A stretch of 64,000 bases of DNA from Octopus sinensis. Its lineage: Eukaryota. The stretch covers positions 76,756,001 through 76,820,000 of the forward strand of contig NC_043001.1 in assembly GCF_006345805.1 (NCBI RefSeq), in the 5' to 3' direction. Within the stretch, counting starts at the first letter, position 1, and each line of letters opens with the position of its first letter. The notes beneath the pieces were generated by a model. That model saw only the letters and a program-made list of their open reading frames with translations, was not told the origin of the DNA and searched no databases. Shown one piece after another: positions 2,469 to 61,345 of this stretch. The translations under genes were made by a program, and so were the position numbers.

Positions 2469-3775
2469 ATACATATATATATGACGGGCTTCTTTCAGTT
2501 TCCGTCTACCAAATCCATTCACAAGGCTTTGGTCAGCCCGGGGCTATAGCCGAAGACACATGTCCAAGGTGCCACGCAGTGGAGAGAGAGAGGGAAGTAG
2601 AGGAGAGAGAGAGATGGAAGTAGAGGAGAGAGAGAGGGAAGTATAGACAAACTATTATTGAAAATGGTGTGGTTTTTGCATCTGTTGCTAGAACAACAAA
2701 AAGCAAGATGTGATTAAACCTATGTCTGCAGCTAAGATTTTTAATTCTCTCTTTTAGTGGCTAAGTTCACCTAGGTATAAGTGCTTTGGTGCTGTGTAAA
2801 TGACTCATCTGAACAGCAGCAGCAGCAATGTTCAATTGGGCTTTCCAAATGTGATTCTACTTGTCATATGAAAAAACGAAACGGAGCAAATTTTGGCGTG
2901 CCTGTGCCTCTCTCCATCCGATTTTGTTTCCTCATAACTTCCTGAAAAATGGTTATTTATTAATGAAATTTTCTACAAATACCTTTCAGATAGTGAAAGT
3001 TATATCAGATTTGTTATGAAAAGTTATTTCGAAGGGAGCGAAGTGTTTCGGATAATTCACAGAAGTCACTTTGTTTGCTCATACCATTCAGAAAAAGAAG
3101 TATCTTTTAATGAAATTTTCTACAATTACCTTTCAGAGGATGTAGAATACAATTATATCGGAATTCACTTCGAAAAAAATTGGTGCACACATACTAACAC
3201 ACATGACGTAAAATGAAAAAATAGAAAATGAAAATTGAAATTTTGAAAAAATTAAGTAATGTGTATGTGCGCGCCCACCAATTTTGTTCACATTATGGTT
3301 CCGGGTTCTGTGGCACCTTGGGCAAGTGTCTTCTACTATAGCCTCGAGCCACCCAAAGCCTTGCGAGTGGATTTAATAGATTGAAACTGAAAGAACGCGG
3401 TCGTATCCGTGTGTCTGTTTGTGTGTGTGTATGTGTTGTCCCATCATCGCTTGACAACCGATGTAGGTGTGTTTACGTCCCCGTAACTTGGCAGTTCGGA
3501 AAAAAGACCGATAGTATAAGTACTAAGCTTGCAATGAAAAAGTTCTGGGGTCAATTTCTTCGACTAAAACTCTTTAAGGCGGTGCCCCAGCATGGCCGCA
3601 GTTTAATGACTGAAACAAGTAAAAGAATAAAAGAATATATCCGTTTCCTTTCCAATAAAATTAGTCCCACGAGGACATTTTCAATAGCTTGTGATGAAGA
3701 TCGAACCAAACACATTCATTATTACTCAACATTTCTTTAGAATTTGCTCACCAGTTCTTAAACTGTTGTTACTAT

Positions 3776-4380
3776 TGAAATGAACTTAGTGTGAGTGAAT
3801 ATCTTGTCTTGTACTTTCGGGGTACAAGAAAGCAATCACTACTCGTTCGTTAATAATCCAGAATTCTACCAGTCAGAAACAACAAGACGCAGACGTAAAA
3901 TATATATATACTACTTTATTCTCTTTCTTGGTAACAATAACAATAAGTGTGTTATCTGATGTCCTTGGTTCTGGGCGCGCAAGGCTGAAAGTTAATCGAT
4001 TGTAACATTTACAATATTCAGCCGCAAATCAGAACGGGTTCAAGATGGCGTCGAACAATGGAGACGATGTTGGTCTGCAACAATTTTGGTTAAAGGCCTT
4101 TTGGTAAGGACTGCTAGAATCAGTTCGAACGGAGAGAAAATATTAACGTCCTGCTCCTTAGGTCGCTGCTGTCCTAAGTCGCCGCTGCTGCTGCCAGCGG
4201 TCAAACGTTCTACGACCCCCTTACCTTGGCTAACCACCAGATAGGCAAAAGGGTCGTGCTTCCGGTGGTTCGCGCATGCGCGAGAGGGCCCTTCCTTTCT
4301 GTGCCTTGGTGAAGGCACCAACACGCGCGAAAATAGAAAATGGACGGTGCGCGCGCGCGCACCGTTATAGTATCACTACT
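3776..4380 (-). repeat. 3' LTR
   Basis: Aligns to 5922-6526 at offset 2146. Minus-strand AATAAA at 3915-3920. Preceded on the minus strand by the purine tract GGAGGGGAG (about 4384-4392). Confidence 0.9.
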
Positions 4381-5921: not shown

Positions 5922-6526
5922 TGTAACAAACTTAGTGTGAGTGAATATCTTGTCTTGTACTTTCGGGGTACAAGAAAGCAATCACTACTCGTTCGTTAAT
6001 AATCCAGAATTCTACCAGTCAGAAACAACAAGACGCAGACGTAAAATATATATATACTACTTTATTCTCTTTCTTGGTAACAATAACAATAAGTGTGTTA
6101 TCTGATGTCCTTGGTTCTGGGCGCGCAAGGCTGAAAGTTAATCGATTGTAACATTTACAATATTCAGCCGCAAAAACAGAACGGGTTCAAGATGGCGTCG
6201 AACAATGGAGACGATGTTGGTCTGCAACAATTTTGGTTAAAGGCCTTTTGGTAAGGACTGCTAGAATCAGTTCGAACGGAGAGAAAATATTAACGTCCTG
6301 CTCCTTAGGTCGCTGCTGTCCCAAGTCGCCGCTGCTGCTGCCAGCGGTCAAACGTTCTACGACCCCCTTACCTTGGCTAACCACCAGGTAGGAAAAGGGT
6401 CGTGCTTCCGGTGGTTCGCGCATGCGCGAGAGGGCCCTTCCTTTCTGTGCCTTGGTGAAGGCACCAACACGCGCGAAAATAGAAAATGGACGGTGCGCGC
6501 GCGCGCACCGTTATAGTATTACTACA
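5922..6526 (-). repeat. 5' LTR
   Basis: TG...CA termini intact (minus strand TGTAGT...GTTACA). Followed by the PBS. Confidence 0.92.
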
Positions 6527-7169
6527 CTATTCTTGTTGAAGACGAAATTATTAAAATGAAACCAAAACTTCTAACACAAACTTGTTATACATAATACTGC
6601 ATATCACAACGGTGACAGCTGGACTACATCAAGCAGTATATTCTTGGCTCATGAATAAAGAAACAAGCACGGCCATTATAACTACATGTATTTAATCATG
6701 CTGAGTTAGCCTTCCGGCAGTTTGAGCGAGATTAAATACACATGGACTTGGCCTAATATTTATTTATTCATAATGGAACATGTATCTAGCAATTATTATT
6801 TCACTATAGCGGCTAATGCCTTTTACATTTGGTTTGCAAGTGTCCGGTTTTCTGAAATTTTGATTAGTGTTTCATGATGAAGTAATAGAGAAGCAAGGAA
6901 CCGCTGAAAAACCGGTGGTCCGTATGTTGTCACTGGTATTGCCCTATGTTCTTGACCAAGACACTTATTATTCGAACGTAGTATTGTACATAGCGATCAC
7001 CGATGCTAAAATTTTGTAACATAGAGTGATGCGAGATGGACTCTACCAAGTTGATTTTCTTTCTTTTTTCCCCCTACACCCCCTCTCTCTCTCCTCTCTC
7101 TGTCTCTCTCTGTCTCTGTCTCTCTCTCCCCTCTCTCTCTCTCTCTGTATATATATATATATATATATA

Positions 7170-7573
7170 CTCTTTTTACTCTTTTATTTGTTTCAGTCAT
7201 TTAACTGTGGCCATGCTGGAGCACCGCCTTTAGTCGAGCAAATCGACCCCAGGACTTATTCTTTGTAAGCCTAGTACTTATTCTATCGGTCTCTTTTACC
7301 GAACCGCTAAGTTACGGGTACGTAGACACACCAGCATCGGTTGTCAAGCGATGCTGGGGGAACAAGCACAGACACACAAACATATACACACACGCATACA
7401 TATACATATATACGACGGGCTTCTTTCAGTTTCCGTCTACCAAATCCACTCACAAGGCTTTGATCGGCCCAAGGCTATAGTAGAAGACACTTGCCCAAGG
7501 TGTCACGTAGTGGGACTGAACCCGGAACCATGTGGTTGGTAAGCAAGCTACTTACCACACAGCCACTCCTACG
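7170..7573 (-). mobile_element. SINE family B, near full length
   Basis: Reverse complement of the 2063-2468 element, including head, CORE-like block and tail. Confidence 0.85.
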
Positions 7574-7760
7574 TGTGTATGTATGTATGTATCTGAAACT
7601 ACCATTACCCAGCTTTGCAGCAATTTTCTTAAGTTTTTGACTATTGTTTTAACATCATTTTAAGGTAATAAATATTTGTCATTAGAAAGTTATTACTCAG
7701 TTCATCATTTTCTGCAAGCACCAAAGAATTTGATACATACAAAATTATAATTATTATATA

Positions 7761-11029: not shown

Positions 11030-11511
11030 TGTGATATCTACTTCGTCAATCTGTATAGGATTTTCCTGTGCCAATCATTTGATCCCTCGTTTGGTGTGAT
11101 ATTATCACGCTACAAACTTCACGACACATTAAACCAGTTTGTAATAGTATTAGGCGACTTTCCAGTAAATGTTATTGTAGTACTCCTCGGGATCTCGTGA
11201 ATAAAATAGTACACTAATTCTAAAATTTCACACACACTCAATCTGCTATTGATCTTCTCATTTAAATCGGTATAGTAGAAAAACGGATTTCCTTCTCGAA
11301 CTGAGCTATATGCTTGATACCTTTTTTTCGAACATCTCAATATTGGCCGGAATTTTCCCGTTCTATTCCTCTTCTTTTTTTCTTGCATTTGTGTTCCGCA
11401 TTTATGACAAGGAGGTACATTTCCTTCCTCGTCAATAAGATAGTGCTCTCTCAAATAAGGCACCGATTCATTTTCGCTTGAGATTATTTTGTAAAAGTCT
11501 CTGGCCAACAT
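11030..11511 (-). pseudogene. Merlin (IS1595/ISXO2-like) transposase, frameshifted N-terminal half
   Basis: MLARDFYKII...PPCHKCGTQM...ILRCSKKR zinc ribbon and ITNWFN. After frameshifts it continues MCREVC and PIQIDE, the first catalytic Asp motif of ISXO2-type DDE transposases. Confidence 0.75.
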
Positions 11512-12769
11512 GGTGCTAGTGTGAACAACTAAACGGGCTAGAATTAATTGCTGAAGGCCGTAAGTGGGTTGTTTGGTAGAGTGCATTGTCATTTACGGTA
11601 GGTCACAAATAGCAAGACAGATATTATACTAAAGTAGCACCAACCCAAGTCTATAATAAAAGACAGATCTTTTCGCTTTGACCGGCAGATATTTAAAATA
11701 ATTTTTTTTGTAACTAAACACTTTTAAACTTCGTATACTGGTAGAATGTGTTTATAAAACATTTTTCTCTTAGCTTTCTTGAGAATATTCTGTAGTTTGT
11801 AGCATATTTGTTGTTTAATTTCTTGCATTTCGGTAATTTCAACCAATCAATGACGTCTATTGAGGTGAAAACAATATCTGCCGAAGTCTGTCAACAATAA
11901 TGTTTTGCGGTGTCATATGAAAATGTTCCTGCTATTTATGACATATTTCATATCAGTTACGTTCGTAAGAATAAAAGTGAAAAGATCCTGAAAGACATGC
12001 CCAATGCACTACACAGCAGGACCGAACCCAAGACCACGCGGTTGGGAAGTAAGCTTCTTACCCACACAATCAACAAATATAACGATATCACCGTAATAAT
12101 ACTATCACGTTGAATGTGGACCATTAAAATAATCATAACAACAGCAATACATGTATAGCTATGAATAATTAATTAGCTGTACGAAAGTCACAATACACTT
12201 AACATATGTCGTCTCACTGGCAAACTATTCGCCGTTGGTAACCCACGCTCCATTGCAACGATAGTTATTAATATTTATTACAGAATGTCCATAATACTAT
12301 TCCACTATGGTCGAAGTAGTGCTGTCTGAACTATGGAACGAAATCTAAGGTATAATTTATTGTTATATAGCTAACATTCATAATATTCGTGAGAGAAATG
12401 ACTGATGAAGTATGGAAGCAAATCGAAGACACAATCGATAAAGGCACCAAGTTATCAAAATAGTCGTACAATAGATGAATCGTATCATAAACTAGAGTGT
12501 TACCCGCCAAAAGTATACTTTTGCTACCATAGATAAACATGAGAAACTAATCACTATGAATAATCCTTTCTATTAAAGGCAAAAGGCCTGGAATTTCTCA
12601 GGTACTTAATTTATCGACCCCGAAATGATGAAAGGCAAAGTCAACTCAGGACGTAGCGACGGGCCAAATAGCGCTAAGCATTTCGTCCAGCGGGATGACG
12701 ATTCTTTCAGCTCGCAGCCTTACAGTCTCTATAAATAATAAATAGCATATATACACACACGCGCGCGTG

Positions 12770-15307: not shown

Positions 15308-15407
15308 NNNNNNNNNNNNNNNNNNNNNNNNNNNNNNNNNNNNNNNNNNNNNNNNNNNNNNNNNNNNNNNNNNNNNNNNNNNNNNNNNNNNNNNNNNNNN
15401 NNNNNNN
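15308..15407. other. Assembly gap (100 N)
   Basis: Run of 100 Ns between microsatellites. Confidence 0.99.
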
Positions 15408-16745: not shown

Positions 16746-17902
16746 ACTTTGTGTATAAAATCCCTCTACTCATTGCCTGCCTCCAGTTCAAGCATGTACA
16801 CTCATCTTGCACCACTTATGTCGACCCTCTCTGTATCTCTTGTTTACTCTTTCTATATATAATATAAAGCTTGACTGGAGACCTCAACTAACCAACTAAA
16901 TAACATATCAACTATTATTATATAACTGTATCGATCAGATTATATCACATTTCTATACATCACTGGTCACAATGTGCTTCCTTGTATTGATGCAGCTTTC
17001 AAATGATACCACCTTGCTGGTTAGATGTGCAGGCCAACATTGCTCCAGAATGAGATGCCAGTCCATCACTGGGTTACCCATTTACAGCTGAATGGACTGG
17101 GACAATGTGAAATGAAGTGTATAAAAGTATAGAGTAACCCATAAGGTTAATGTAAAATTGTTCTTATTGTAACTGAACTGGCAGAATTGTAGCATGCCAG
17201 GCAGAATACTTCACAGTATTATGTCTGTCGCTAGGTTCTGAGTTCAAATTCTGCCGAGGTCAACTTTGCCTTTCTTCTTTTCGGGGTCGATAAATTAAAT
17301 ACCAGGGAAACACTTGGATTGATGTAACTGACTAATTCCCTCCCACAAAATTTCAGGCCTTTTGCCTATATTAGATAGAAAAGATTATAACCAAACATGT
17401 AAACAAACTTTAATATAGTTTTGTATGTGTGTGTGTCTGTGTGTATAAAATAGGTATTTTTTTTTATTCTTTTACTTGTTTCAATCGGTTGGCTGCGGCC
17501 ATGCTGGAGCACCACCTTTAGTCGAACAAATCGACCCCAGGACTTATTCTTTGAAGCCTAGTTCTTATTCTATTGGTCTCTTTTGCTGAACTGCTAAGTA
17601 GAAGACACTTGCCCAAGGTGCCATACTGTAGGATTGAACCTGGAACCATGTGGTTGGGAAGCAAGCTTCTTAACACACAGCCATGCCTGCATCTATATAT
17701 ACTCTTTTACTCTTTTCAGCCATACTGGAGCACCGCCTTTAGTCGAGCAAACTGACCCCAGGATTTATTCTTTGTATGTCTAGTGCTTATTCTTTCGGTC
17801 TCTTTTGCCGAACCACTAAGTTACGGGGACGTAAACACACCAGCATCAGTTGTCAAGCGATGTTGGAAGGACAAACACAGACACACAAACATATACACAC
17901 CC

Positions 17903-17955
<53 letters not shown>

Positions 17956-19489
17956 TACGACGGGCTTCTTTCAGTTTCCGTCTACCAAATCCACTCACAA
18001 AGATTTGGTCAGCCCGAGGTTATAGTAGAAGACACTTGCCTTAGGTGGTATGCAGTGGGACTGAACCTGGAACCATATGGTTAGTAAACAAGCTACTTAC
18101 CACACAGCCACTCCTACCCCTATGTATAACTTAATATCATATAAAAATTGGTTGCTGTCTTATCTGCTTGCTTTTCGTGCATCACGTGCAGAAGTTGACA
18201 GAAACCTAGGGGACAATCACATCACAATATTACTTTGCTAGAAGTTGACGTCATTTAAGACCAAAGTATAGAACATTCATTTATACAAGCGATTACCATC
18301 CACAGACAACATTGCCAATAAATCTACAATATTATGATAAAAATATTCTGTTTCTTATCATTATTTTCATAATTTTTTTTTCTTTTCCTTTTCTTTTTTA
18401 CATTTATCGTATTTTGACGATATCAGAATTTCATTAATAAATTTCCAATTTTGGTCAATACATAATTTCTTCACAGACAACCAAACCAACAAATATCAGA
18501 TTCAGTCTTTTACAGCAGAATTTCAATTTGTCATTCATTTTCAGTCGATTTTAGATAAAGAAAAAAAATCTCTTTTCCCGATAATTTCGTTAATGTTTGG
18601 TTTCTTTTATATAATAACACCCAAACATTTTTTATCAGCTCAACCGGCCAGGTACTGTTCCATCGTAGTGTGTGCATGTGTGTGTTTCAAAGAAGATATT
18701 TTGCTGTTTTGTCCAGCACGTCAAATAACATTCTTTGATTGGTTTTCACAGCTTCTGAAGATAAGAAACATTCACATTTACTGTTTATCTTCTAGCTATC
18801 AATCTGTCTGTTTCTGCCTATCTGTCTGTCTTCCTCTTTGGCTTGACTGGAACTGGCAAGACCAGGGCCACACCAGGCTTCATGGTCTATTCTAGCTTGG
18901 TTTTTACGGCTGGATGCCTTTCCTAACACCAACCACTTCACAAAGGGTACTGGGTGCATTTTATGTGCCACCAGTGCTTTTTACCTGAAAGAAAGCCAGT
19001 TGTAGATATGTGTGTGTGTGTATGTGTTTTAGTCCCCTCACCATAGCTTAACAACTGCTGTTGATGTGCTTACGTCCCCGTAACTTAGTGGTTCAGCAAA
19101 AGAGACCGATAGAATAAGTGCTAGGCTTTCAAAGATTAAGTCCTGGGGTTGATTTGTTCGACTAAAGGTGGTGCCCCAGCATGGCCACAGCCAAATGATT
19201 GAAACATGTAAAAGAATAAAAGAAAAAATATCTATTTGATACATATATACATACAATGATTTTTAGATGGCACCTTGGTATTAGGATCTCAATTCTGTTG
19301 TGGTGGGTGGGCCTTATAATTATATAATTACGTTTCTATTTCAACTTCCATCCTTCTATACACACCCACCCATATGTAGGTGGCTGAGTATTCCTAAAAC
19401 ACTTGTGCCACTCTTATGCCCTTAATGCAATGCTCAGGCAGAATTAGCACAACAGTGTGTGGTAAGCAAGCTCAGCAATTTGAAATAAA

Positions 19490-25207: not shown

Positions 25208-25406
25208 GTGTGTGTGTATATGTAGGTAAATGTGTATGCATATATGTATATATATAAATATATATATATAGGTGTATATGTGTGTGTGTGTATATATATA
25301 TATATAGGTATATATATGTATATATAAATGTAGGTATATATAGGTATATATGTATATATAAATGTAGGTATATATAGGTATATATGTATATATAAATGTA
25401 GGTATA

Positions 25407-27745: not shown

Positions 27746-27975
27746 AGGCGAGCTGGCAGAATCGTTAGCACGCCGGGCGAAATGCTTAGCGGTATTTCGT
27801 CTGCTGTGACGTTCTGAGTTCAAATTCCGCCAAGGTCGACTTTGCCTTTCATCCTTTCGGGGTCGATAAATTAAGTACCAGTTACGCACTGGGGTCGATG
27901 TTATCGACTTAATACCTATGTCTGTCCTTGTTTGTCCCCTCTGTGTTTAGCCCCTTGTGGGTAATAAAGAAATAA
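27746..27975 (+). mobile_element. SINE family A, full length
   Basis: Head, B box, Meta-like core, and tail GTTTAGCCCCTTGTGGGTAATAAAGAAAT. Confidence 0.85.
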
Positions 27976-28805: not shown

Positions 28806-29265
28806 AGGCGGCGAGCTGGCAGAAACGTTAGCACGCCGGGCAAAATGCTTAGCGGTATTTCGTCTGCGTTACGTTGTGAGTTCAAATTCCGCCGAGGTCG
28901 ACTTTGCCTTTCATCCTTTCGGGGTCGATAAATTAAGTACCAGTTACGCACTGGGGTCGATGTAATCGACTTAATACCTATGTCTGTCTTTGTTGTCCCC
29001 TCTGTGTTTAGCCCCTTGTGGGTAATAAAGAAATAGGTATTTCGTCTGCCGTTACGTTCTGAGTTCAAATACCGCCGAGGTCGACTTTGCCTTTCATCCT
29101 TTCGGGGTCGATTAAATATGTACCAGTTACGCACTGGAGTCGATATAATCGACTTAATCCGTGTGTCTGTCCTTGTTTGTCCCTTCTGTGTTTAGCCCCT
29201 TGTGGGTAGTAAAGAAATGGGTATTTCGTGTGTCTAAGTTCAAATTCCACCGAGGTCGACTTACT
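28806..29265 (+). mobile_element. SINE family A head-to-tail multimer (1 full + 2 partial)
   Basis: The tail AAAGAAATAGGTATTTCG runs directly into the internal GGTATTTCGTCTG at about 29036 and again at about 29220. Confidence 0.85.
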
Positions 29266-30566: not shown

Positions 30567-30943
30567 GGCGCGGGTATGGCTGTGTGGTAAGAAGCTTGCT
30601 TCTCAAACATGTAACACCAGGTTCAATCCCACTACATGGCACCTTGGGCAAGTGTCTTCTATTATAGCCTTGCACCGACCAGCGCCTTGTGAGTGGATAT
30701 GGTTGACGGAAACTGAAAGAAGCTTATCGTGTGTGTGTGCATGTATATATATATATATATATATATATATTTGCTGTAGTTCCAGCTCATAGCTGTGGCC
30801 ATGCTGATGCACCGCCGTTAACTAGACCTCCCCGGCGAGGAATCGAACCCCGGTTTCCCGCGTGACAGGCGGGGATATTTACCACTATATTACCGAGGAC
30901 TGGCATATATATTATATACTTCAGCCATGCTAGGTCACCGCCA

Positions 30944-34242: not shown

Positions 34243-34613
34243 TACTCTTTTACTCTCTTACCTGTTTCAGTCATTTGACTGCGGCCATGCTGGAGCACCG
34301 CCTTTAGTCGAGCAAATCGACCCCAGGACTTATTCTTTGTAAGCCTAGTAACTTATTCTATCGGTCTCTTTTGCCGAACCGCTAAGTTACGGAGACGCAA
34401 ACACACCAGCATCGGTTGTCAAGCGATGTTGGGGGACAAACACACACACACACATATATACATACATATATACGACGGGCTTCTTTCAGTTTCTGTCTAC
34501 CAAATCCACTCACAAGGCTTTGGTCAGCCCGAAGCTATAGTAGAAGACACTTGCCCAACCTGGAACCATGTGGTTGGTAAGCAAGCTACTTACCATACAG
34601 CCACTCCTGCGCC
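34243..34613 (-). mobile_element. SINE family B
   Basis: High similarity to 7170-7573. Confidence 0.85.
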
Positions 34614-36218: not shown

Positions 36219-36263
36219 TTAAAGCATTCGTGATATTAATGCAATTTAAGCAAAACAGGCGTG

Positions 36264-36650
36264 GCTTGTGGCAAGAAGTTTGCTTTCCAGCCACGTGGTT
36301 CCGGTTTGAGTCTCACTGCGTGACACCTGGCGCAGGTGTCTTTTACTATATCCCTGGGTCGACCAAAACCTTGTGAGTGGATTTAGTAGACGGAAACTGA
36401 AAGAAGCCCGTCGTTTGTGTGTTATATATGTGTGTCTGTGTTTGTCCCCGCCCCACCGCTTGACAACCGGAGTTGATGTGCTCACCGTCCCTGTAACTTT
36501 AGCGGTTCGGCAAAAGACACCGATGGAATAAGTACTCGGTTTTATAAAGTATAAGCACTGGGGTCGACTCGTTCGACAAAAATTCAAGACGGTGCCCCAG
36601 CATGGCTGCAGTCTGATGGTTGAAACAAATAGAAGATAAAAGATAAAACA
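36264..36650 (+). mobile_element. SINE family B
   Basis: Head, CORE-like block and tail present. Confidence 0.8.
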
Positions 36651-36853
36651 AAGATGACGGTTGAAAGTCTGCCTCCTCCAAGTGGGTAAGTTTTCGGAGC
36701 AGCTGTTCATTGTCGGTGCGTTGAAACCAATCCCAAAAATATTTCTTCAGAGCGGACTATTGAATTTAGACAGTGAGGATGAGGAATACCTTGTAAAATA
36801 TTTAAGGTTGGGATTAACGGAAAATCTTGCCTCTCCCAATATAGAAACATTTC

Positions 36854-42700: not shown

Positions 42701-44156
42701 TGTCGACTCTTAAAGTTTCTCTAATAATAATAATTCTGGGTTCAAAACATTTGGTGCAAGGTCAATATTTCTGGTGGAGAGAGGTGAGTCGATTACATTG
42801 GACCCTAGTATTTGACTAGTACTTTATTTTAATGATTATAGAAGGATGGAAAGCAAAGTCGATCTCGACAGAATTCGAATTCAACGTAAAAAGCCGGAAG
42901 AAATGCCGTTTAGCATTTTTTCCGACGCGCTAAAGATTCTGTCATCTCTCCGCCTTCCCAATGCGAATAAAAATAATCCTTTCTACTATAGGAACAAGGT
43001 CTGCAATTTAGGTGGAAGGGGTAAGTCAATTAAATTGACCTCGGTACTTGATTGGTAATTAATATATCGACCCCAAAAGAATGAAAAGCAAAGTCAACCT
43101 CGGCGGAATTTGAACTCAGAACGTAAAGACAGACGAAATACCGATAATGATAATAATCATAATAATCATTTCTACTAAAGGCATAAGACCTGAAATTTGG
43201 GAGGAGGGTACTAATCGTTTCAAAGGCTTTATTGGATCTTCTACAATTCGAATGAGAGTTACGGGTAATGGGTACTTTGTGCAATTATTGTGCTGGAGAC
43301 ATGAAGAAGTATGAAAAAGCTTGTTGGTGACAATAAAAATGAGTTTACATGTACAAAGCTACGAATAGGTAGCTTATCGAATGACTAACAGTGATAATTA
43401 CGAGGTATTACATAATCTGTCTTGGAAGTAAAGTGAATGTTTCTCAGATTCACTTTTTCTGATAAGGAGAAAAACTGACTGGTACTTTATTGACCGACCA
43501 TGGAAGGATGAAAGACAAACTTGTCCGCTGTGGAATTTGAACTCAGAAGGCAAAATGCCAGAATAAATGCCACAGGGCATTTCGTACCGCATGCTCTTAC
43601 GATTCTGCCTTTTCGGATAGTCTGTGTATAGGTGCGCCATCGATTTCTCGGTACCCTTGGTTCCTATATCATCTGTGGTCATGTAATAAAACTTTAAATT
43701 TTGTCCCGTTGCTTCTCAATGCTACAAGCAATAGAGGAACCAATGCCATAGACATAACACAGCTTGCATCCCGAAACCCTACAGTTCATTTTTTTTTCGA
43801 CAGTTCTACTCCTTTATCTTGGATTGATATGGATTAGTGCTTACATTTGAAATAACTTCTGCTGATCTTGGTTCTCTTAGTTGTAGCCATAGCTAAAAGC
43901 AATTTTAGGATAAATAACCAGAAGGTATCGTCAGTAACAAGTGCAATGTGAATAACACATGTAAACATACGGTACACACAACATCTGTAGTTGCGCAATG
44001 AACTAGACTGGTGACTAAAGAAATTTCAAGCCCCCCCCCCCACTCTTTGTAATTCATCTGGAAGTGCCTCACTATCACTTCCCGGTTTGTCTGAGGTGCA
44101 TCTATGTGTGAGTGTATGTTTGTGTATGTATATGTGTGTGTGTGTGTGTGTATGTA

Positions 44157-49047: not shown

Positions 49048-51460
49048 GCATTATGCATATATATCTGCGTATATATATATGAATTACTCGCGCTTACGCA
49101 CACGTTAATGTAAAAACTGATTGGATAAACTGACAGATACTTTTACAGCATTACGTAGCGTTTAATCATGTCTATCGTATAAAAATGTTATTTCTCACAT
49201 TGACACAATACTAAAAATACGGCTGCTTTTCTTGGTGAGGAAAGTTAAATCGACCTCAGTATTCTGCAAGTATTTATATTTTGACTTTTATTTTGTTTCA
49301 CTCATTGCAGTGCGGCCATGCTGGGGCACCACCTCGAAAGGTTTTTAGTCCGAGAAATCGATTCTAGTATTTGTTTACTTATTTATTTGGTGTGGTAATT
49401 GTTCTGTCGGTGTCTTTTGCCGAACCGCTAAGTTATGGGGGTTGTGAGCAAACGGACGCTGGTTGTCAAATGGTGCGGGAGGACAGATACACACACACCA
49501 CACACATATATATATACGACGGGCTTCCACACAGTTTCCGTCTACCAAATTCAATCTCAAGATATTGGTCTACCTGGAGCTATAGTAGAAGACGCTTTGT
49601 GGAATTGAACCCAAGACCACATAGCTACGCTTGTGCCTTCATTGACCCAAATAAGATGAAAGTTTGGTTTCATACATTTTTCTTATTTTATTTGAAAATC
49701 TCTTTTTATGCTAATTTCACATGCGTATTGCGTATTCATAATTTTTTTTCAGTTCCTACTCAAAACTGCTTACAGATCACAACCATCTCACGAACGCAGG
49801 TTCGTGAGGAGCGTTTCGCGTTCCGATGGTTGTGAAAAGAACACGGGCGTTTAAAGAGTGAAATTTTTAAAGATCGACACTTTTTATTCATTTCATCCAA
49901 TTAATATTCATCCATTCGCGGTACGCAATCGCAATTTTATAAAAACGCCATTTTTTTTTTGTATTTTGTATTAGTTTGTTTGGAGACACTACTTACTTTT
50001 TTCAGGAAGTAAATAATAAATATAAGAAAATGAAACTAAAATTAAAATTAAACAAAAATTAAAACGAAAATGAAACAAAAATCTTTAGCCTAACCAAGTA
50101 GTTCTCATCCGGGATCTGTATGGCCTCTAGGAATCCACATGGCCTCTAGAGGTCCACATGAACCATGTGGGTCCATATAAGATTATGCTGTTGAAATTTG
50201 TGCAATAAACTGGCTATACTTCTACAATGCACAAAATATTTTAATTCTTTTAATAGAACTCCTAATAATATTTAATTATAAAAATGTAATGGGACTTTTT
50301 TAAACATAGAATGTTTATTAGGGTTCAGTAGACCAAAATAAGAACCATAAGGGCCCATAGGTTGATAATCAATGCACTGAACCCTAACCCAAAATGGTTT
50401 CAGTTGGTTGCTTTGGGGCCATGTGAAATAAAACATCGTCTGCTTTTTTGATCTCCTTTGCCGAAGCCCTAAGTTGCTAGGACGTAAACAAACCAGCACC
50501 TGTTCTCAAGCGAAGGTGGGACACAAACACACGCACGCGTGTGTGTTTGCGTGTACGACGGGCTTCTTTCGGTTTCAATCTACTAAATCCACTCACAAGC
50601 TTTTGTTCAGTCCGACGGCTATTATGGAAAGACACTTGCCCGAGGTGCTACGCACTGGGACTGAACCCAGAATCGTGTGGTTAGGAAGCAAATGTTTTAC
50701 CGCACCGCACCGCACCGCCTGTGCAGCAATTTTTCTATGAAATCAACAGAAGTGTCTGTCAATCCGCAACCATCCGGTTGACCTTGGCATGATTCGAAAT
50801 CAGAACGTAAAAGAACCGTATCTAAAATATTGCTACAAGACATTTTAATAAGCATCTGCCAACTGCTCGTCACAGTTAAGTGTTAGAGAGAGAGCAAGAA
50901 CATGTACGTCAATGTGGCAGGTTCATACATTAAAAGGCATCGCGCCAGCTTATAAAGTGCACAAGGTGCGGTTTTTATCAAGTCTTCCCCCTTCTCTCTT
51001 ACTATAAACGAGTCGCTAACATCAACGAAACTCAAGTATTTACATTAAGCATCACCAACTAGATTTACAAATCGACACCGTCACCTTCAACAATTCTTTT
51101 TTTTTGTTTCAACTGTTAACAAACAATTTATTGAATGACGTCAGTTCCACGCACCTTCCTCTTTCTCCTTACCACACTTCTACAGTTTCTTGAAGCCGAT
51201 GCATGGAATACATTTCTGTTTGTCTTTTTATTTAATTATGTATTTTATTTGTGTATTTGTTTTGTATTTGACATTGTTATATGGATTTCGTTGCTTTCTG
51301 TTTCTACTCTTGATTTTCGAGACAAGACAGGTACACACACATACGTCTGTTTGTGTGCTTAAGAATATAAGAATAGTTTAGACTTCGAATTTCCGTCTGC
51401 TTATATATATATATATATATATAAACGCATATATGTATTACATATATATATATATATTAT

Positions 51461-51505
<45 letters not shown>

Positions 51506-51510
51506 CACAC

Positions 51511-51615
<105 letters not shown>

Positions 51616-51686
51616 TACACACACACATACATACATACTACATACATACATACATACATACATACATACATACATACATACATACA

Positions 51687-51719
<33 letters not shown>

Positions 51720-51803
51720 GTGTGTGTGTGTAATACACATATATGTGTGTAATACACATATATGTGTGTGTGTAATATATATATATATATATATATAAGC
51801 AGA

Positions 51804-52276
51804 CGAAAAACTGTATGCAAGCAATAATAAATCTCTGAACGAGATGTAAACAGTAACTGCACGACAATGTAAGGTATACTAGCCATCTCAATATAGCTAA
51901 CCACTAAGGGTACCTTACATTGTCGTGCAGTTACTGTTTACATCTCGTTCAGAGATTTATTATTGCTTGCATACAGTTTTTCGAGATCAGTGACGAAAAG
52001 TTACTGGAAAAACGATATATAAGGATTTGCATTGGGACTCCCTTCATCGAAAACCGGTGATTGCCGTACGCTGAAGACAGGCTAATACCTAGAAACTGCA
52101 GTCCGTGTGTATCACTTAGGTTGACGAGGGAGGGATGACCTCCCTTTGCAAATACCATAAGGGCACAGAAAGTGTGCATAAAGCCAGCTGGAGACGATGT
52201 TCTCCTGGGGCTACAAGCTACAGTAACACCCACCCTTAGTGGTTAGCCATATTGAGATGGCTAGTATACCTTACAT
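51804..52276 (+). mobile_element. Retrozyme-like element: 356-bp monomer plus 107-bp inverted partial copy
   Basis: TACCTTACAT occurs at 51911 and 52267 (period 356). 51804-51910 is the reverse complement of the unit's last 34 nt joined to its first 73 nt. Contains a canonical HHR and no ORF of note. Confidence 0.8.
52056..52116 (+). ncRNA. Type I hammerhead ribozyme (canonical core)
   Basis: Stem I UACG/CGUG with distal GGUGAU/AUCACU; CUGAAGA at 52071-52077; C-A mismatch then stem II AGG-CUAAUA-CCU; GAAA at 52092-52095; palindromic stem III ACUGCAGU; GUC cleavage site after 52103. Confidence 0.8.
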
Positions 52277-53058
52277 ATAAATCAACAATTAGACATAAAC
52301 ACAGTCGTGTTTTAATACGTGTGCGCGCGTGTAAAAGTTCCAGCCTACTGGATGTCAGTATTCAATGACACTCCCCTCCCGCCACCAAACTAACCTATCC
52401 CGTTGTTATCCGTGAATTTATATATTAAAGGTTTCAAATTTTGACACAAGGCCAGCTGTTTTAGGAGGAGGGAAGTCGATTATATCAACGTCAGTACTTG
52501 GTTTGTCGACCCCGAAATGATGGAAGGCAAAACTGGCCGCGGCGGCATTTGAACTCAGAACTCAACGTAAAGAGTCGGAAGAAATGCCATTTAGCATTTT
52601 GTCCGACACGCCAACAATTCTTCCAGCTCACCGTTATGAAATAACCAAAATTTCACATTCACTCACACATTTATAAATACAAATCTCTTATAGGGATATT
52701 TATCCAAGCGACACTGGTTTAATATATTAAATTTTGAAGAGAAAATCCTTCAATGAATACATTATATAGAATATCGTAAGATATCAAACGTTTTTATTGA
52801 GTTAGAAAACAGAGAGACCTAATGGATACACATTAATTTATCGATTAACATATTAACCAACAATTGTTTCATTTGCTAGTTGTTGATTAATTAATAAATT
52901 AGTTTGTATCCATTTGATCTCTCAATTTTCTAACTGTCTCTCTCTCTCTCTCTCTCTCTCTCTGTACATATATATATATATACATGTGATCTCTTGAGCA
53001 CCACCAGCAAAAATATTTTTTTCCTCTGTCTTCCCTTCTCGGGATCTTTCCTTCTCCT

Positions 53059-53188: not shown

Positions 53189-53219
<31 letters not shown>

Positions 53220-53224
53220 TCTTC

Positions 53225-53600
53225 TATTACATATTTCAGTCGTTTGACAGCGGTTATGCTGGAGCACCGCCTTAAAGGGTTTTAGTCGAAATGACCCCAG
53301 AACTTATTCTTTGTAAGCCTAATTCTTATTCTATCGGTCTCTTTTATCGAACCGCTAGTTACGGGGACGTACACACACCAACATCGGTTGTCAAGTGGTG
53401 GTGGGAAGACAAACAAAGACACACACACATTTATACACACGACGGGTTTCTTTCAATTTCCGTCTACCAAATCCACTCTCAAGACTTTGGTCGGTCCGAG
53501 GCTATAGTAGAAGAAACTTGCCCATGGTGCTACTCTGTGGGACTGAACCAGGAACCATGTCGTTGGGAAGCAAGCTTTTTAGCACACATCCATGCCTGCG
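53225..53600 (-). mobile_element. SINE family B
   Basis: Reverse complement of the consensus seen at 2063. Confidence 0.8.
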
Positions 53601-56282: not shown

Positions 56283-56498
56283 TATATACTTTTAATATTC
56301 TACTTGTTTCAGGCATTTGACTGCGGCCATGCTGGAGCACCGTCTTGAGTTTTAGTCGAGCAAATCGACCCCAGGACTTATTTATTAAGCCTAGTACTTA
56401 TCCTATCGGTCTTTTGCCGAACCGCTGAGTTACAGGAACGTAAACACACCAGCACCGGTTGTCAAGCAGTGATGGACACACACACATACACCCCACCC

Positions 56499-56531
<33 letters not shown>

Positions 56532-57119
56532 ATAGGTTTCTTTGAGTTTCCGTCCACCAAATCCACTCACAAACCTTTGGTCACAAAGGTTTGCCCAAGG
56601 CGTCACGCTGTGGGACTGATCCCGGAACCATGTGGTTGGGAAGCAAGCTTCTTAGTATACAATCACACCTGCGCCTATATATGTGCGTTTGTGTGTGTCG
56701 TGTCCCTCATGACTATTCGACAACTGGGGTTGGTTTGTTTACGTCCCCGTTTCCAAGCTGTCTGGCAAAAGCGACTGATTCAGTAAGTAGTAGGTTTTTT
56801 AAAAAAAATGCATTAGTGTCTTTGTTCGGCTAAAACCTTCAAGGCAGCGCCCCTGCTTGGCTGCAGTCCAATGACTGAAACAAGTAAAAGTTAAATGTAA
56901 GTTTTTGTTTCAGTGACCACTGTAAAGACAAGCCCACGCGCCAATTGTGTGCTCGACTTATTACAAATTGCACTCAAACCTCTGTTAATTAGCACCCTAC
57001 CTTTTAGAAAAGGAAGTAGACTTTAGCATGGGTTTGAATCATTAATCATTTTGTTGATAATTCACCATATAAAATAGGTTGCGCGTGGAAGCGAGAATGA
57101 ACGCACTAATGTTTATCTG

Positions 57120-61179: not shown

Positions 61180-61345
61180 GCGACGAGCTGGAAGAATCGT
61201 TAGCATGCCGGGCAAAATGCTTAGCGATATTTCGCCCGTCACTACGTTCTGTGTTCAAATTCCGCCGAAGTCGATTTTACCTTTCATCCTTTCGGGTCGA
61301 TAAATTAAGTACCAGTGAAACACTGGGGTCGATGTAATCGTCTAC
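61178..61345 (+). mobile_element. SINE family A
   Basis: GCGACGAGCTGGAAGAATCGTTAGCATGCCGGGC...CCTTTCATCCTTTCGGGTCGATAAATTAAGTACCAG. Confidence 0.8.

What the first reader, a model, noticed from the sequence alone, without database searches (positions are those of the whole stretch)
51911..52276. 356-nt retrozyme-like unit with a canonical type I hammerhead ribozyme
Seen: a non-coding 356-bp unit with a 10-nt terminal redundancy (TACCTTACAT) and a complete HHR: CUGAAGA, a 3-bp stem II, GAAA, a short palindromic stem III (ACUGCAGU), a GUC site after 52103, and a bipartite stem I. Other hairpins occur in the unit (TAGCCAT/ATGGCTA, GGGAGG/CCTCCC, GGAGA/TCTCC). Known: metazoan non-LTR retrozymes (reported in axolotl, Acropora, Mytilus) are ~170-400-nt type I HHR repeats with short palindromic stem III that yield abundant circular RNAs, and Penelope-like pLTRs also carry HHRs. 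Inference: this is a retrozyme-class element in an octopus-like genome. I do not know of one described there but cannot check.
Basis: partly seen in the sequence, partly recalled or inferred. Interest (0 to 1): 0.88.

Follow-up and report, generated by a model that had tools for sequence, protein, structure and literature searches.

The report
Solo hammerhead retrozyme copy with inverted fragment
This is one stranded copy of a small non-coding mobile element carrying a hammerhead self-cleaving RNA motif, a kind already known in molluscs and other animals; its layout suggests it was copied from a circular or multi-unit RNA.

Summary
Window 51911-52266 is a 356-nt non-coding unit followed by the first 10 nt of a second unit. 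At 52056-52116 (+) it carries a type I hammerhead motif with every core nucleotide and the usual metazoan geometry. Only 1 of 2000 dinucleotide shuffles of the window gave such a motif.

Two qualifications:
- The base of helix II is a C-A mismatch, not the conserved G10.1-C11.1 pair.
- No Rfam hammerhead model scores it. A control shows Rfam also misses another real multicopy hammerhead family.

It abuts the direct copy head-to-head, next to (TA)n/(CA)n microsatellite. That is the insertion signature described for Penelope-like elements (PLEs).

Best reading: a young, dead-end monomer insertion of a non-LTR retrozyme, that is, a PLE-dependent non-autonomous element. It was copied from a circular or multimeric RNA.

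With a single hammerhead, this locus cannot release a 356-nt circle. Genome copy number, core conservation, cleavage, circular RNA and host organism could not be tested.

Mollusc retrozymes and 235 squid Hammerhead_1 loci are already published, so this is a new member of a known kind. Interest is modest.

The parts
51911..52266 (+). One complete 356-nt retrozyme-like unit (44.4% GC, non-coding)
   Evidence: The longest frame in the unit (94 aa, minus strand) has no homologue and no Pfam hit. As a circle the RNA folds to -110.1 kcal/mol, z = -4.2 against 200 dinucleotide shuffles, with 65% of bases paired.
52267..52276 (+). First 10 nt of a second unit (TACCTTACAT), giving a direct tail-to-head junction at 52266/52267
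   Evidence: The sequence departs from the unit at 52277 (genome ATAAATC, unit TGTCGTG).
51877..51911 (-). Inverted copy of unit positions 322-356 (the 35-nt tail), 34/35 identical
   Evidence: (I2). The single mismatch is at unit position 338.
51804..51876 (-). Inverted copy of unit positions 1-73, 73/73 identical. With the previous part it forms a second, inverted tail-to-head junction
   Evidence: (I1).
52056..52116 (+). Type I hammerhead motif: helix I 5' strand 52056-52070, CUGAAGA 52071-52077, helix II and loop 2 52078-52091, GAAA 52092-52095, palindromic helix III ACUGCAGU 52095-52102, C17 52103, helix I 3' strand 52104-52116
   Evidence: Geometry is 6 bp / 4 positions / palindromic 8-mer, the same as the Rfam RF00163 consensus shown and as the 'canonical metazoan' description in PMC4209133. 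The 10.1/11.1 position is a C-A mismatch.
52103..52104 (+). Predicted self-cleavage site (after GUC), unit position 193/194
   Evidence: Inferred from the motif, not tested.
51404..51795 (.). (TA)n / (CA)n / (CATA)n / (TG)n microsatellite block directly left of the element; probable target region
   Evidence: PLE insertions are biased toward (TA)n and (CA)n (PMC8557442).
51390..51403 (+). Host flank TTTCCGTCTGCTTA next to (TA)n; left arm of an inverted duplication
   Evidence: (I15).
51796..51809 (-). Inverted duplicate of that flank (TAAGCAGACGAAAA, 13/14). Its last 6 nt (CGAAAA) overlap the end of the inverted unit copy, which gives microhomology with unit 68-73
   Evidence: (I15).

Best explanation
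The locus is a single, evolutionarily young insertion of a small non-autonomous retroelement of the metazoan non-LTR retrozyme kind, that is, a Penelope-like-element (PLE) dependent hitch-hiker.

How the family would work (inferred from published retrozymes):
- Tandem master copies elsewhere are transcribed into multimeric plus-strand RNA.
- Neighbouring hammerheads pair through their palindromic helix III (ACUGCAGU), form active dimers and cut after GUC.
- A host tRNA-type ligase circularises the monomers, and the circle folds into a stable quasi-rod.
- A PLE reverse transcriptase/endonuclease acting in trans nicks a microsatellite target and copies the circular or multimeric RNA by target-primed reverse transcription.

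What happened at this locus (inferred from the sequence):
- Bottom-strand priming gave 1.03 units: back from position 10 of the next unit, through the full unit (356 down to 1).
- A second priming from the top strand at unit position 73 gave the inverted 108-nt piece (73 to 1, then 356 to 322). This priming used CGAAAA microhomology. It may have followed snap-back of the self-complementary (TA)n end, which would explain the inverted duplicate of the host flank.
- The two cDNAs were joined head-to-head at 51910/51911.

Consequence: only one hammerhead is present, so a transcript of this locus can be cut at most once. It cannot yield a unit-length RNA or circle, so this copy is a dead end.

Shown here: the sequence architecture, the motif and its statistics, and the predicted folds. 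Inferred: cleavage, ligation, the identity of the reverse transcriptase and the priming steps.
For: (1) The hammerhead has all core nucleotides and the canonical metazoan geometry. It gives 1 hit in the window against 1 of 2000 shuffles with any hit. Its geometry equals the RF00163 consensus and the description in PMC4209133.

(2) The tail-to-head junction GCTAGTA|TACCTTACAT is present twice: once direct (52266/52267) and once inverted with 73 further nt (51877/51876), 107/108 identical. The template therefore had a 356-nt period.

(3) The insertion ends (unit 1, 10 and 73) do not coincide with the cleavage site (193/194). The template was therefore not a simple cleaved linear monomer.

(4) The locus has an inverted 5'-truncated copy abutting the 5' end and a (TA)n/(CA)n target. 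These are the published hallmarks of PLE insertions (PMC8557442). Opposite-strand hammerhead pairs 100-700 bp apart are reported in PMC4209133. An unrelated hammerhead family recovered from metagenomes shows the same adjacent inverted copies (L010, L024).

(5) Size (356 nt), GC (44%) and absence of coding capacity, LTR or promoter boxes fit non-LTR retrozymes (PMC7229834, PMC7761336).

(6) The circular RNA fold is -110 kcal/mol with z = -4.2, and helix I extends into a long rod.

(7) Helix III is +2.9 kcal/mol as a hairpin but -11.1 kcal/mol as an intermolecular 8-bp duplex. This fits dimer-dependent cleavage.

(8) No RT or GIY-YIG domain occurs in the largest open frames within about 8 kb. 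This copy is not attached to an autonomous element.
Against: - No second copy of the unit was found in the window or in any reachable collection. A multicopy family, conservation of the core and covariation are therefore unshown.
- No Rfam hammerhead model scores the motif.
- The C10.1-A11.1 mismatch replaces a pair that PMC4209133 calls highly conserved, so activity may be weak or absent.
- No clear target-site duplication flanks the insertion.
- The inverted duplicate of host flank is not part of the textbook PLE picture and needs an extra step.
- The host genome, and hence the presence of PLEs in it, is unverified.
Confidence: 0.7

Rival explanations
1. The locus is the remnant of a genomic tandem array of at least three units. 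It was rearranged at the DNA level by inversion of a junction-spanning segment plus deletion, rather than being a primary twin-primed insertion.
For: The same junction appears in both orientations. Palindromic microsatellite flanks are prone to fold-back rearrangement. Published retrozymes are usually tandem (PMC7229834).
Against: This needs several independent events: an inversion, a 283-nt deletion and loss of all further units. Yet the two arms are 107/108 identical. The head-to-head arrangement is exactly the one known from PLE-type insertion (PMC8557442).
Confidence: 0.12
2. It is a fragment of an autonomous Penelope-like element (its pseudo-LTR or termini), not a separate non-autonomous family.
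For: PLE pseudo-LTRs carry hammerheads, and animal retrozymes are sister to PLE pseudo-LTRs (10.64898/2026.07.22.740005). The insertion signature is PLE-like.
Against: - The 356-nt period is shown by two junctions, so head and tail are contiguous with no reading frame between them.
- No RT/EN domain is nearby.
- The ribozyme has the canonical 6/4 architecture with loop 1 and loop 2. It is not the PLE 'minimal' type with a long helix II and an extra nucleotide after A9 (PMC4209133).
Confidence: 0.1
3. The hammerhead-like motif is a chance match inside an unrelated short repeat or fold-back element.
For: - About 20 descriptor matches are expected by chance in a 2.5-Gb genome (extrapolated).
- Rfam is silent.
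- The 10.1/11.1 pair is broken.
- Only one copy is available.
Against: - The chance of such a match inside this particular 356 nt is about 3e-6.
- Features not in the descriptor also fit: helix I is exactly 6 bp to an internal loop, helix II has 4 positions, loop 2 is 6 nt beginning C-A as in the RF00163 consensus, helix III is fully palindromic, and helix I extends into a rod.
- The element independently shows a circular or tandem template and a PLE-type insertion.
- The control shows that Rfam silence carries little weight.
Confidence: 0.05
4. The inverted segment is an assembly artefact, such as a fold-back chimeric read at a microsatellite.
For: Near-perfect inverted repeats beside long microsatellites are a known weak point of assemblies. 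The window holds a 100-N gap elsewhere (15308-15407).
Against: The structure is not a simple palindrome. The arms are separated by the 34-nt tail in inverted orientation and carry one mismatch. A fold-back read would not create that.
Confidence: 0.03

Closest known systems
Metazoan non-LTR retrozymes (Cervera & de la Pena 2020, PMC7229834), e.g. the Mytilus galloprovincialis 350-390-bp repeats and the axolotl Rtz_353 carrying HHR_Amex2
   Same: - The unit is about 350 nt, under 45% GC and non-coding.
- It carries a type I hammerhead.
- Helix III is 2 bp plus a palindromic tetraloop.
- The base of helix II is mismatched, as in HHR_Amex2.
- The RNA is predicted to fold into a stable self-paired circle.
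- The template was of more than unit length.
   Different: Here there are only 1.03 direct units plus an inverted fragment, not a tandem array. Copy number and circular RNA are unknown. The mismatch is C-A rather than U-U.
Classical hammerhead-bearing repeats: Schistosoma Sm-alpha, newt satellite 2 (Rfam RF00163 Hammerhead_1)
   Same: The geometry matches the RF00163 consensus: helix I 6 bp, helix II 4 positions with a 6-nt loop starting C-A, GAAAC-NNNN-GUC palindromic helix III. Dimer-dependent cleavage is expected (Forster 1988, cited in PMC4209133).
   Different: All eight helix II letters differ from the consensus GUCC/GGAC, and 10.1/11.1 does not pair. No RF00163 score was reported at E<=10.
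Penelope-like elements and their pseudo-LTR hammerheads (PMC4209133, PMC8557442)
   Same: An inverted 5'-truncated copy abuts the 5' end, the junction is a partial tandem, the target is a microsatellite, and a hammerhead lies on the sense strand.
   Different: There is no RT/GIY-YIG reading frame and the total period is only 356 nt. The ribozyme is of the canonical type, not the PLE minimal type.
L1 twin priming (5'-inverted LINE-1 insertions; from my own knowledge, Ostertag & Kazazian 2001)
   Same: An inverted 5' segment is joined head-to-head to a direct 3' segment, with microhomology at the second priming site.
   Different: The enzyme family differs. The template here must be circular or multimeric. 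An inverted duplicate of host flank is present.
   Same: N7 is A and helix III is ACUGCAGU. The family is invisible to Rfam, and some loci have adjacent inverted copies. L016 is a true tandem with a period of about 530 nt.
   Different: There is no sequence similarity outside the pattern used to find them. Their helix II has a G10.1-C11.1 pair and an extra A after A9.

Membership tests
Hammerhead ribozyme, type I | Conserved core C3 U4 G5 A6 N7 G8 A9 / G12 A13 A14 / A15.1-U16.1 / H17 (not G) | tested here: met
   CUGAAGA, GAA, A..U and C17 at 52071-52103.
Hammerhead ribozyme, type I | Type I topology: helix I open, helices II and III closed by loops | tested here: met
   Order of elements is helix I 5' strand, core, helix II hairpin, GAAA, helix III, C17, helix I 3' strand.
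Hammerhead ribozyme, type I | Canonical metazoan geometry: helix I 6 bp to loop 1, helix II 4 bp, helix III 1-2 bp with a 2-4-nt palindromic loop (PMC4209133) | tested here: met
   Helix I is 6 bp then a 3/1 internal loop. Helix II has 4 positions with a 6-nt loop. Helix III is A-U and C-G closing UGCA.
Hammerhead ribozyme, type I | Conserved G10.1-C11.1 (purine-pyrimidine) pair at the base of helix II | tested here: not met
   C10.1 (52078) faces A11.1 (52091). Only 3 base pairs follow.
Hammerhead ribozyme, type I | Score at or above the Rfam RF00163 gathering threshold (34 bits) | tested here: not met
   No hammerhead-clan hit at gathering, nor at E<=10 on 801 nt or 101 nt. In the control, RF00163 scored L012 at 33.3 bits and HH9 scored L016 at 24.9 bits, but none of the 10 JAAUYA-family copies searched, which carry compensatory helix II changes, was scored. 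The test therefore has low sensitivity.
Hammerhead ribozyme, type I | Site-specific self-cleavage | not testable with these tools
   Needs in vitro transcription of monomer and dimer constructs.
Hammerhead ribozyme, type I | Conservation of the core and covariation in the helices across copies | not testable with these tools
   No second copy containing the ribozyme was reachable.
Metazoan non-LTR retrozyme | Non-coding unit of about 170-400 nt (51-972 in vertebrates) with a type I hammerhead, low GC, and no LTR/PBS/PPT | tested here: met
   356 nt, 44.4% GC, no homologue and no Pfam domain.
Metazoan non-LTR retrozyme | Head-to-tail tandem arrangement (dimer or longer) in the genome | tested here: inconclusive
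   Only 1.03 direct units are present. The tail-to-head junction is nevertheless seen twice. Monomeric derivatives are common in published families.
Metazoan non-LTR retrozyme | Many copies per genome | not testable with these tools
   No eukaryotic genome collection was available. There is no other copy in the 64-kb window.
Metazoan non-LTR retrozyme | Expression as linear and circular RNA of unit length | not testable with these tools
   No transcriptome data. This locus alone has one cleavage site and cannot give a unit-length RNA.
Metazoan non-LTR retrozyme | Stable, highly self-paired predicted fold of the circular RNA | tested here: met
   -110.1 kcal/mol, z = -4.2, 65% of bases paired.
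Penelope-like element (autonomous) | Reading frame with reverse transcriptase and GIY-YIG endonuclease | tested here: not met
   No Pfam hit in the unit or in the largest open frames of 44-60 kb. Short degraded remnants were not excluded.
Penelope-like element (autonomous) | Insertion signature: partial tandem, adjacent inverted 5'-truncated copy, microsatellite target | tested here: met
   compared with the description in PMC8557442.
Penelope-like element (autonomous) | Minimal hammerhead variant: extra nucleotide between A9 and 10.1, long helix II, short helix I without loop 1 | tested here: not met
   Helix II has 4 positions and helix I is 6 bp plus an internal loop plus 6 bp.

The most novel reading that the evidence does not exclude
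The locus is a molecular fossil of how animal retrozymes move. A circular (or multimeric) hammerhead RNA was reverse transcribed for more than one turn by a Penelope-type enzyme at a (TA)n target. Second-strand priming then came from a snapped-back microsatellite end that switched onto the RNA at a 6-nt microhomology. It would also mark a recently active retrozyme family in a cephalopod, a lineage where none has been characterised, using a natural C-A pair at hammerhead position 10.1/11.1.
Probability: 0.3. Interest if true: 0.45.

Novelty: new member of a known kind. Interest (0 to 1): 0.3.

Why it matters
If the family proves multicopy and active, it would extend hammerhead retrozymes to another mollusc lineage. 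It would also offer a clean single-locus example of integration from a circular or multimeric RNA. The insertion ends do not coincide with the ribozyme cut site, and the architecture is inverted-plus-direct. Both bear on the still hypothetical rolling-circle, PLE-mediated mobilisation of animal retrozymes.

The C-A mismatch at 10.1/11.1 probably came from the template. The insertion is about 1% diverged, so a later hit on exactly that pair is unlikely. It would be a cheap test of how much that conserved pair matters in a natural ribozyme.

A practical point: Rfam models miss hammerheads whose helix II departs from GUCC/GGAC. Automated annotation therefore undercounts them.

Tried and rejected
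Searches that found nothing:
- Rfam at gathering threshold and at E<=10 gave no hammerhead hit. The miRNA-family 'hits' at 51844-51943 are just the 73-bp inverted repeat, and those at 51700-51790 are microsatellite.
- Looking for other copies:
  - protein search with the unit's 94-aa frame;
  - exact look-ups of the 34-aa and 46-aa frames;
  - the specific DNA pattern in metagenome, viral and prokaryote genome collections;
  - blastn within the window.
- The degenerate pattern found other hammerhead families, but none related to this unit.
- Host identification failed:
  - The ORF at 11119-11592 is not on record.
  - That ORF has one 71% homologue on an ENA contig that shares nothing else with the window.
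  - A frame derived from a repeat family at 36246-36710 gave no hits.
I replaced it with the ten largest open frames, which gave nothing relevant.

Ideas rejected:
- Pol III A/B boxes or a tRNA-like head: none at 2 or fewer mismatches, and no ARAGORN hit.
- MITE or terminal inverted repeat element: the inverted arms pair with internal parts of the direct copy, not with its far end.
- The 10-nt repeat as a target-site duplication: the inverted copy carries the same tail+10-nt+head context.
- Satellite DNA: only 1.03 units are present.
- A second 'loose' hammerhead-like match on the minus strand near 25237-25270 has a 3-bp helix I and a 12-nt loop 2. I regard it as chance (expected 0.036 per window).

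Full report
**What is in the sequence**

Window 51911-52266 is a 356-nt, 44.4% GC stretch. It is followed at 52267-52276 by a repeat of its first 10 nt, TACCTTACAT.

On the plus strand at 52056-52116 lies a complete type I hammerhead arrangement:
- The helix I 5' strand is GGUGAUUGCCGUACG.
- CUGAAGA follows at 52071-52077.
- Helix II and loop 2 are CAGG-CUAAUA-CCUA.
- GAAA follows at 52092-52095.
- ACUGCAGU follows at 52095-52102.
- C17 is at 52103.
- The helix I 3' strand is CGUGUGUAUCACU.

**Is it more than chance?**

I wrote a descriptor with these requirements:
- CUGANGA and GAAA are present.
- Helix II has at least 3 bp, with a mismatch allowed at its base.
- A15.1-U16.1 closes a helix III hairpin of at least 2 bp.
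- H17 is not G.
- Helix I has at least 5 bp.

It gives exactly one hit in both strands of the 64 kb. It gives a hit in only 1 of 2000 dinucleotide-preserving shuffles of the whole window. That is strong for one window. It extrapolates to roughly 20 chance hits in a genome of 2.5 Gb, so the motif alone is not proof.

Several features not required by the descriptor also fit:
- Helix I is exactly 6 bp up to an asymmetric internal loop and then continues for 6 more pairs.
- Helix II has the standard 4 positions with a 6-nt loop.
- Helix III is a perfect 8-nt palindrome.

PMC4209133 describes the canonical metazoan hammerhead in exactly these terms: helix I 6 bp, helix II 4 bp, and helix III 1-2 bp with a small palindromic loop that acts as a dimer in tandem repeats. 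The Rfam RF00163 consensus printed (aUccag CUGAcGA GUCC CAA+3 GGAC GAAACGcgCGUC cuggAu) has the same geometry.

**Two qualifications to 'canonical'**

First, position 10.1/11.1 is C-A, where G-C is highly conserved (PMC4209133). A mismatch at the base of helix II is known from the weakly active axolotl HHR_Amex2 (PMC7229834).

Second, no Rfam hammerhead family matches at the gathering threshold. None matches at E<=10 on 801 nt, nor on a 101-nt slice.

I tested how much that silence means. A degenerate pattern scan of metagenome contigs returned 24 loci. Fifteen of them belong to one multicopy family (projects JAAUYA01/JAAUXW01) with compensatory changes in helix II: GGGC/GCCC, GGAC/GUCC and GGGU/ACCC.

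Rfam results on these controls:

| Locus or family | Rfam result |
|---|---|
| L012 (canonical) | RF00163, 33.3 bits |
| L016 (tandem) | HH9, 24.9 bits |
| JAAUYA family (10 copies searched) | none detected |

The RF00163 consensus has a fixed GUCC/GGAC helix II, and my motif differs at all eight letters. Rfam's silence is therefore weak evidence against the motif.

Window 51804-51911 is the reverse complement of unit positions 322-356 followed by 1-73. It is 107 of 108 identical, with the mismatch at unit 338.

This inverted fragment spans the same tail-to-head junction (GCTAGTA|TACCTTACAT) that appears in direct form at 52266/52267. It abuts the direct copy head-to-head at 51910/51911.

Four conclusions follow:
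- The 10-nt redundancy is not a target-site duplication. It is the start of a second unit.
- The template had a 356-nt period, so it was circular or multimeric.
- Head and tail are contiguous with no reading frame between them. This copy is therefore a 356-nt non-autonomous element and not the untranslated region of a longer one.
- The insertion ends (unit 1, 10 and 73) do not coincide with the predicted cleavage site (193/194). The template was not simply a self-cleaved linear monomer primed at its end.

**Context**

Directly to the left lies about 400 bp of (TA)n, (CA)n, (CATA)n and (TG)n.

The published structure of Penelope-like element (PLE) insertions matches the locus (PMC8557442). [quoted passage not shown] Opposite-strand hammerhead pairs 100-700 bp apart were noted in PMC4209133. 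In the unrelated JAAUYA family, two loci (L010, L024) also carry adjacent inverted copies.

A 14-nt host-flank sequence next to (TA)n (51390-51403, TTTCCGTCTGCTTA) recurs inverted at 51796-51809 (13/14). Its last six bases, CGAAAA, overlap the end of the inverted unit copy.

I read this as follows, with modest confidence. A top-strand end in the self-complementary (TA)n tract snapped back and copied its own flank. It then switched onto the RNA at a UUUUCG microhomology (unit 68-73). This is a twin-priming-like route to the inverted piece.

No target-site duplication is evident.

**Other properties**

- The unit has no homologue for its longest frame and no Pfam domain.
- The largest open frames within about 8 kb show no reverse transcriptase or GIY-YIG domain.
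- There are no pol III boxes and no tRNA-like structure. This agrees with the statement that animal retrozymes lack promoters (PMC7761336).
- As a circle the RNA folds to -110.1 kcal/mol, z = -4.2, with helix I prolonged into a long rod. Published retrozyme circles are predicted to be similarly self-paired.
- Helix III costs +2.9 kcal/mol as a hairpin but gains -11.1 kcal/mol as an intermolecular duplex. It forms in the cofold of two motifs, which points to dimer-dependent cleavage.

**Most likely mechanism**

The element belongs to a family of non-LTR retrozymes, that is, PLE-dependent non-autonomous elements. The 2026 preprint 10.64898/2026.07.22.740005 argues that animal retrozymes derive from PLE pseudo-LTRs and that monomeric derivatives are common.

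The inferred life cycle is:
- Master tandem arrays elsewhere would be transcribed.
- Adjacent hammerheads would cut the transcript as dimers.
- A host ligase would circularise the monomers.
- A PLE enzyme would copy the circle for more than one turn at a microsatellite target.

This locus is the product of that process: 1.03 direct units plus a 0.30-unit inverted fragment. With one hammerhead it can be cut once at most and cannot release a 356-nt RNA. It is a dead-end copy.

The arms differ at 1 of 108 positions, so the insertion is young. For that reason the C-A mismatch was probably already in the template rather than acquired afterwards.

**What could not be done**

No eukaryotic genome collection was available. 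The following all returned nothing:

| Attempt |
|---|
| Protein search with the unit's longest frame |
| Exact look-ups of the unit's short frames |
| Specific hammerhead DNA pattern in metagenome, viral and prokaryote genome collections |
| blastn of the unit against the window |

Copy number, conservation of the core, covariation, the autonomous partner and expression remain open.

The host was not identified. The window is AT-rich (37% GC), rich in microsatellites and interspersed repeats, and has a metazoan-type tRNA-Asp. This is compatible with, but not diagnostic of, a cephalopod.

**Comparison and novelty**

Retrozymes of 350-390 bp with type I hammerheads are described in a mussel and 'from molluscs to arthropods' (PMC7229834). 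The giant squid genome paper lists 235 Rfam Hammerhead_1 loci (PMC6962438). Octopus genomes carry PLEs, including young insertions (PMC13282606).

I found no paper that characterises a cephalopod retrozyme.

The finding is therefore a new member of a known kind. Its mildly interesting features are the integration architecture and the C-A position.

Noticed in passing
window 30828-30899 (-): tRNA gene with anticodon GUC (Asp), 57.1 bits. It is the only Rfam hit at gathering threshold in the window.
   Followed up: no
window 52430-52633 and at least 14 other places (e.g. 28809-28940, 27747-27878, 61185-61312, 42877-42952): An abundant short interspersed repeat of about 140-200 bp at 67-92% identity. 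It starts about 150 bp right of the element.
   Followed up: partly
window 7161-7583, 2055-2482, 34243-34611, 17719-18117, 53197-53600, 56283-56673, 36257-36641, 3310-3640: A second repeat family of about 400 bp (73-86% identity). Its copies give the recurring pseudo-peptide '...FRLPN.LTR.WS...' seen in many open frames.
   Followed up: partly
window 3783-4379 and 5929-6525: A 598-bp direct duplication, 99% identical, 2146 bp apart.
   Followed up: no
window 15308-15407: A run of 100 N, which is an assembly gap.
   Followed up: no
window 11119-11592 (-): A 157-aa open frame with no Pfam domain. Its one 71%-identical homologue (P0001) lies on a 54-kb ENA metagenome contig (L025) that shares nothing else with the window. 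It is possibly a gene from a mobile element.
   Followed up: partly
window 52800-52848 / 52887-52935: A 49-nt inverted repeat (84% complementary) with a 38-nt spacer; a MITE-like hairpin.
   Followed up: no
window 51844-51943 and 51700-51790: Sub-threshold Rfam 'miRNA' and snoRNA matches. They are artefacts of the 73-bp inverted repeat and of the microsatellite, not RNA genes.
   Followed up: yes
window about 25237-25270 (-): A loose hammerhead-like string (CUGAAGA ... GAAA) with a 3-bp helix I and a 12-nt loop 2. It is probably chance.
   Followed up: partly
L001, L002, L004, L006-L010, L014, L015, L017, L018, L021, L023, L024 (contigs JAAUYA01/JAAUXW01): - This is a multicopy eukaryotic hammerhead family: CUGAAGA, an unpaired A, a 4-bp helix II with compensatory changes, then GAAACUGCAGUC.
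- Rfam does not detect it.
- The ribozyme segment is more conserved (85-92%) than its flanks (68-75%).
- Two loci have adjacent inverted copies.
   Followed up: partly
L016 (JGI11756J13266_100240), hammerheads at 30, 563, 1091: Three identical hammerheads in tandem with a period of 528-533 nt. This is a bona fide tandem retrozyme-like repeat in a metagenome contig. It scored only 24.9 bits by Rfam HH9 (gathering threshold 52).
   Followed up: no
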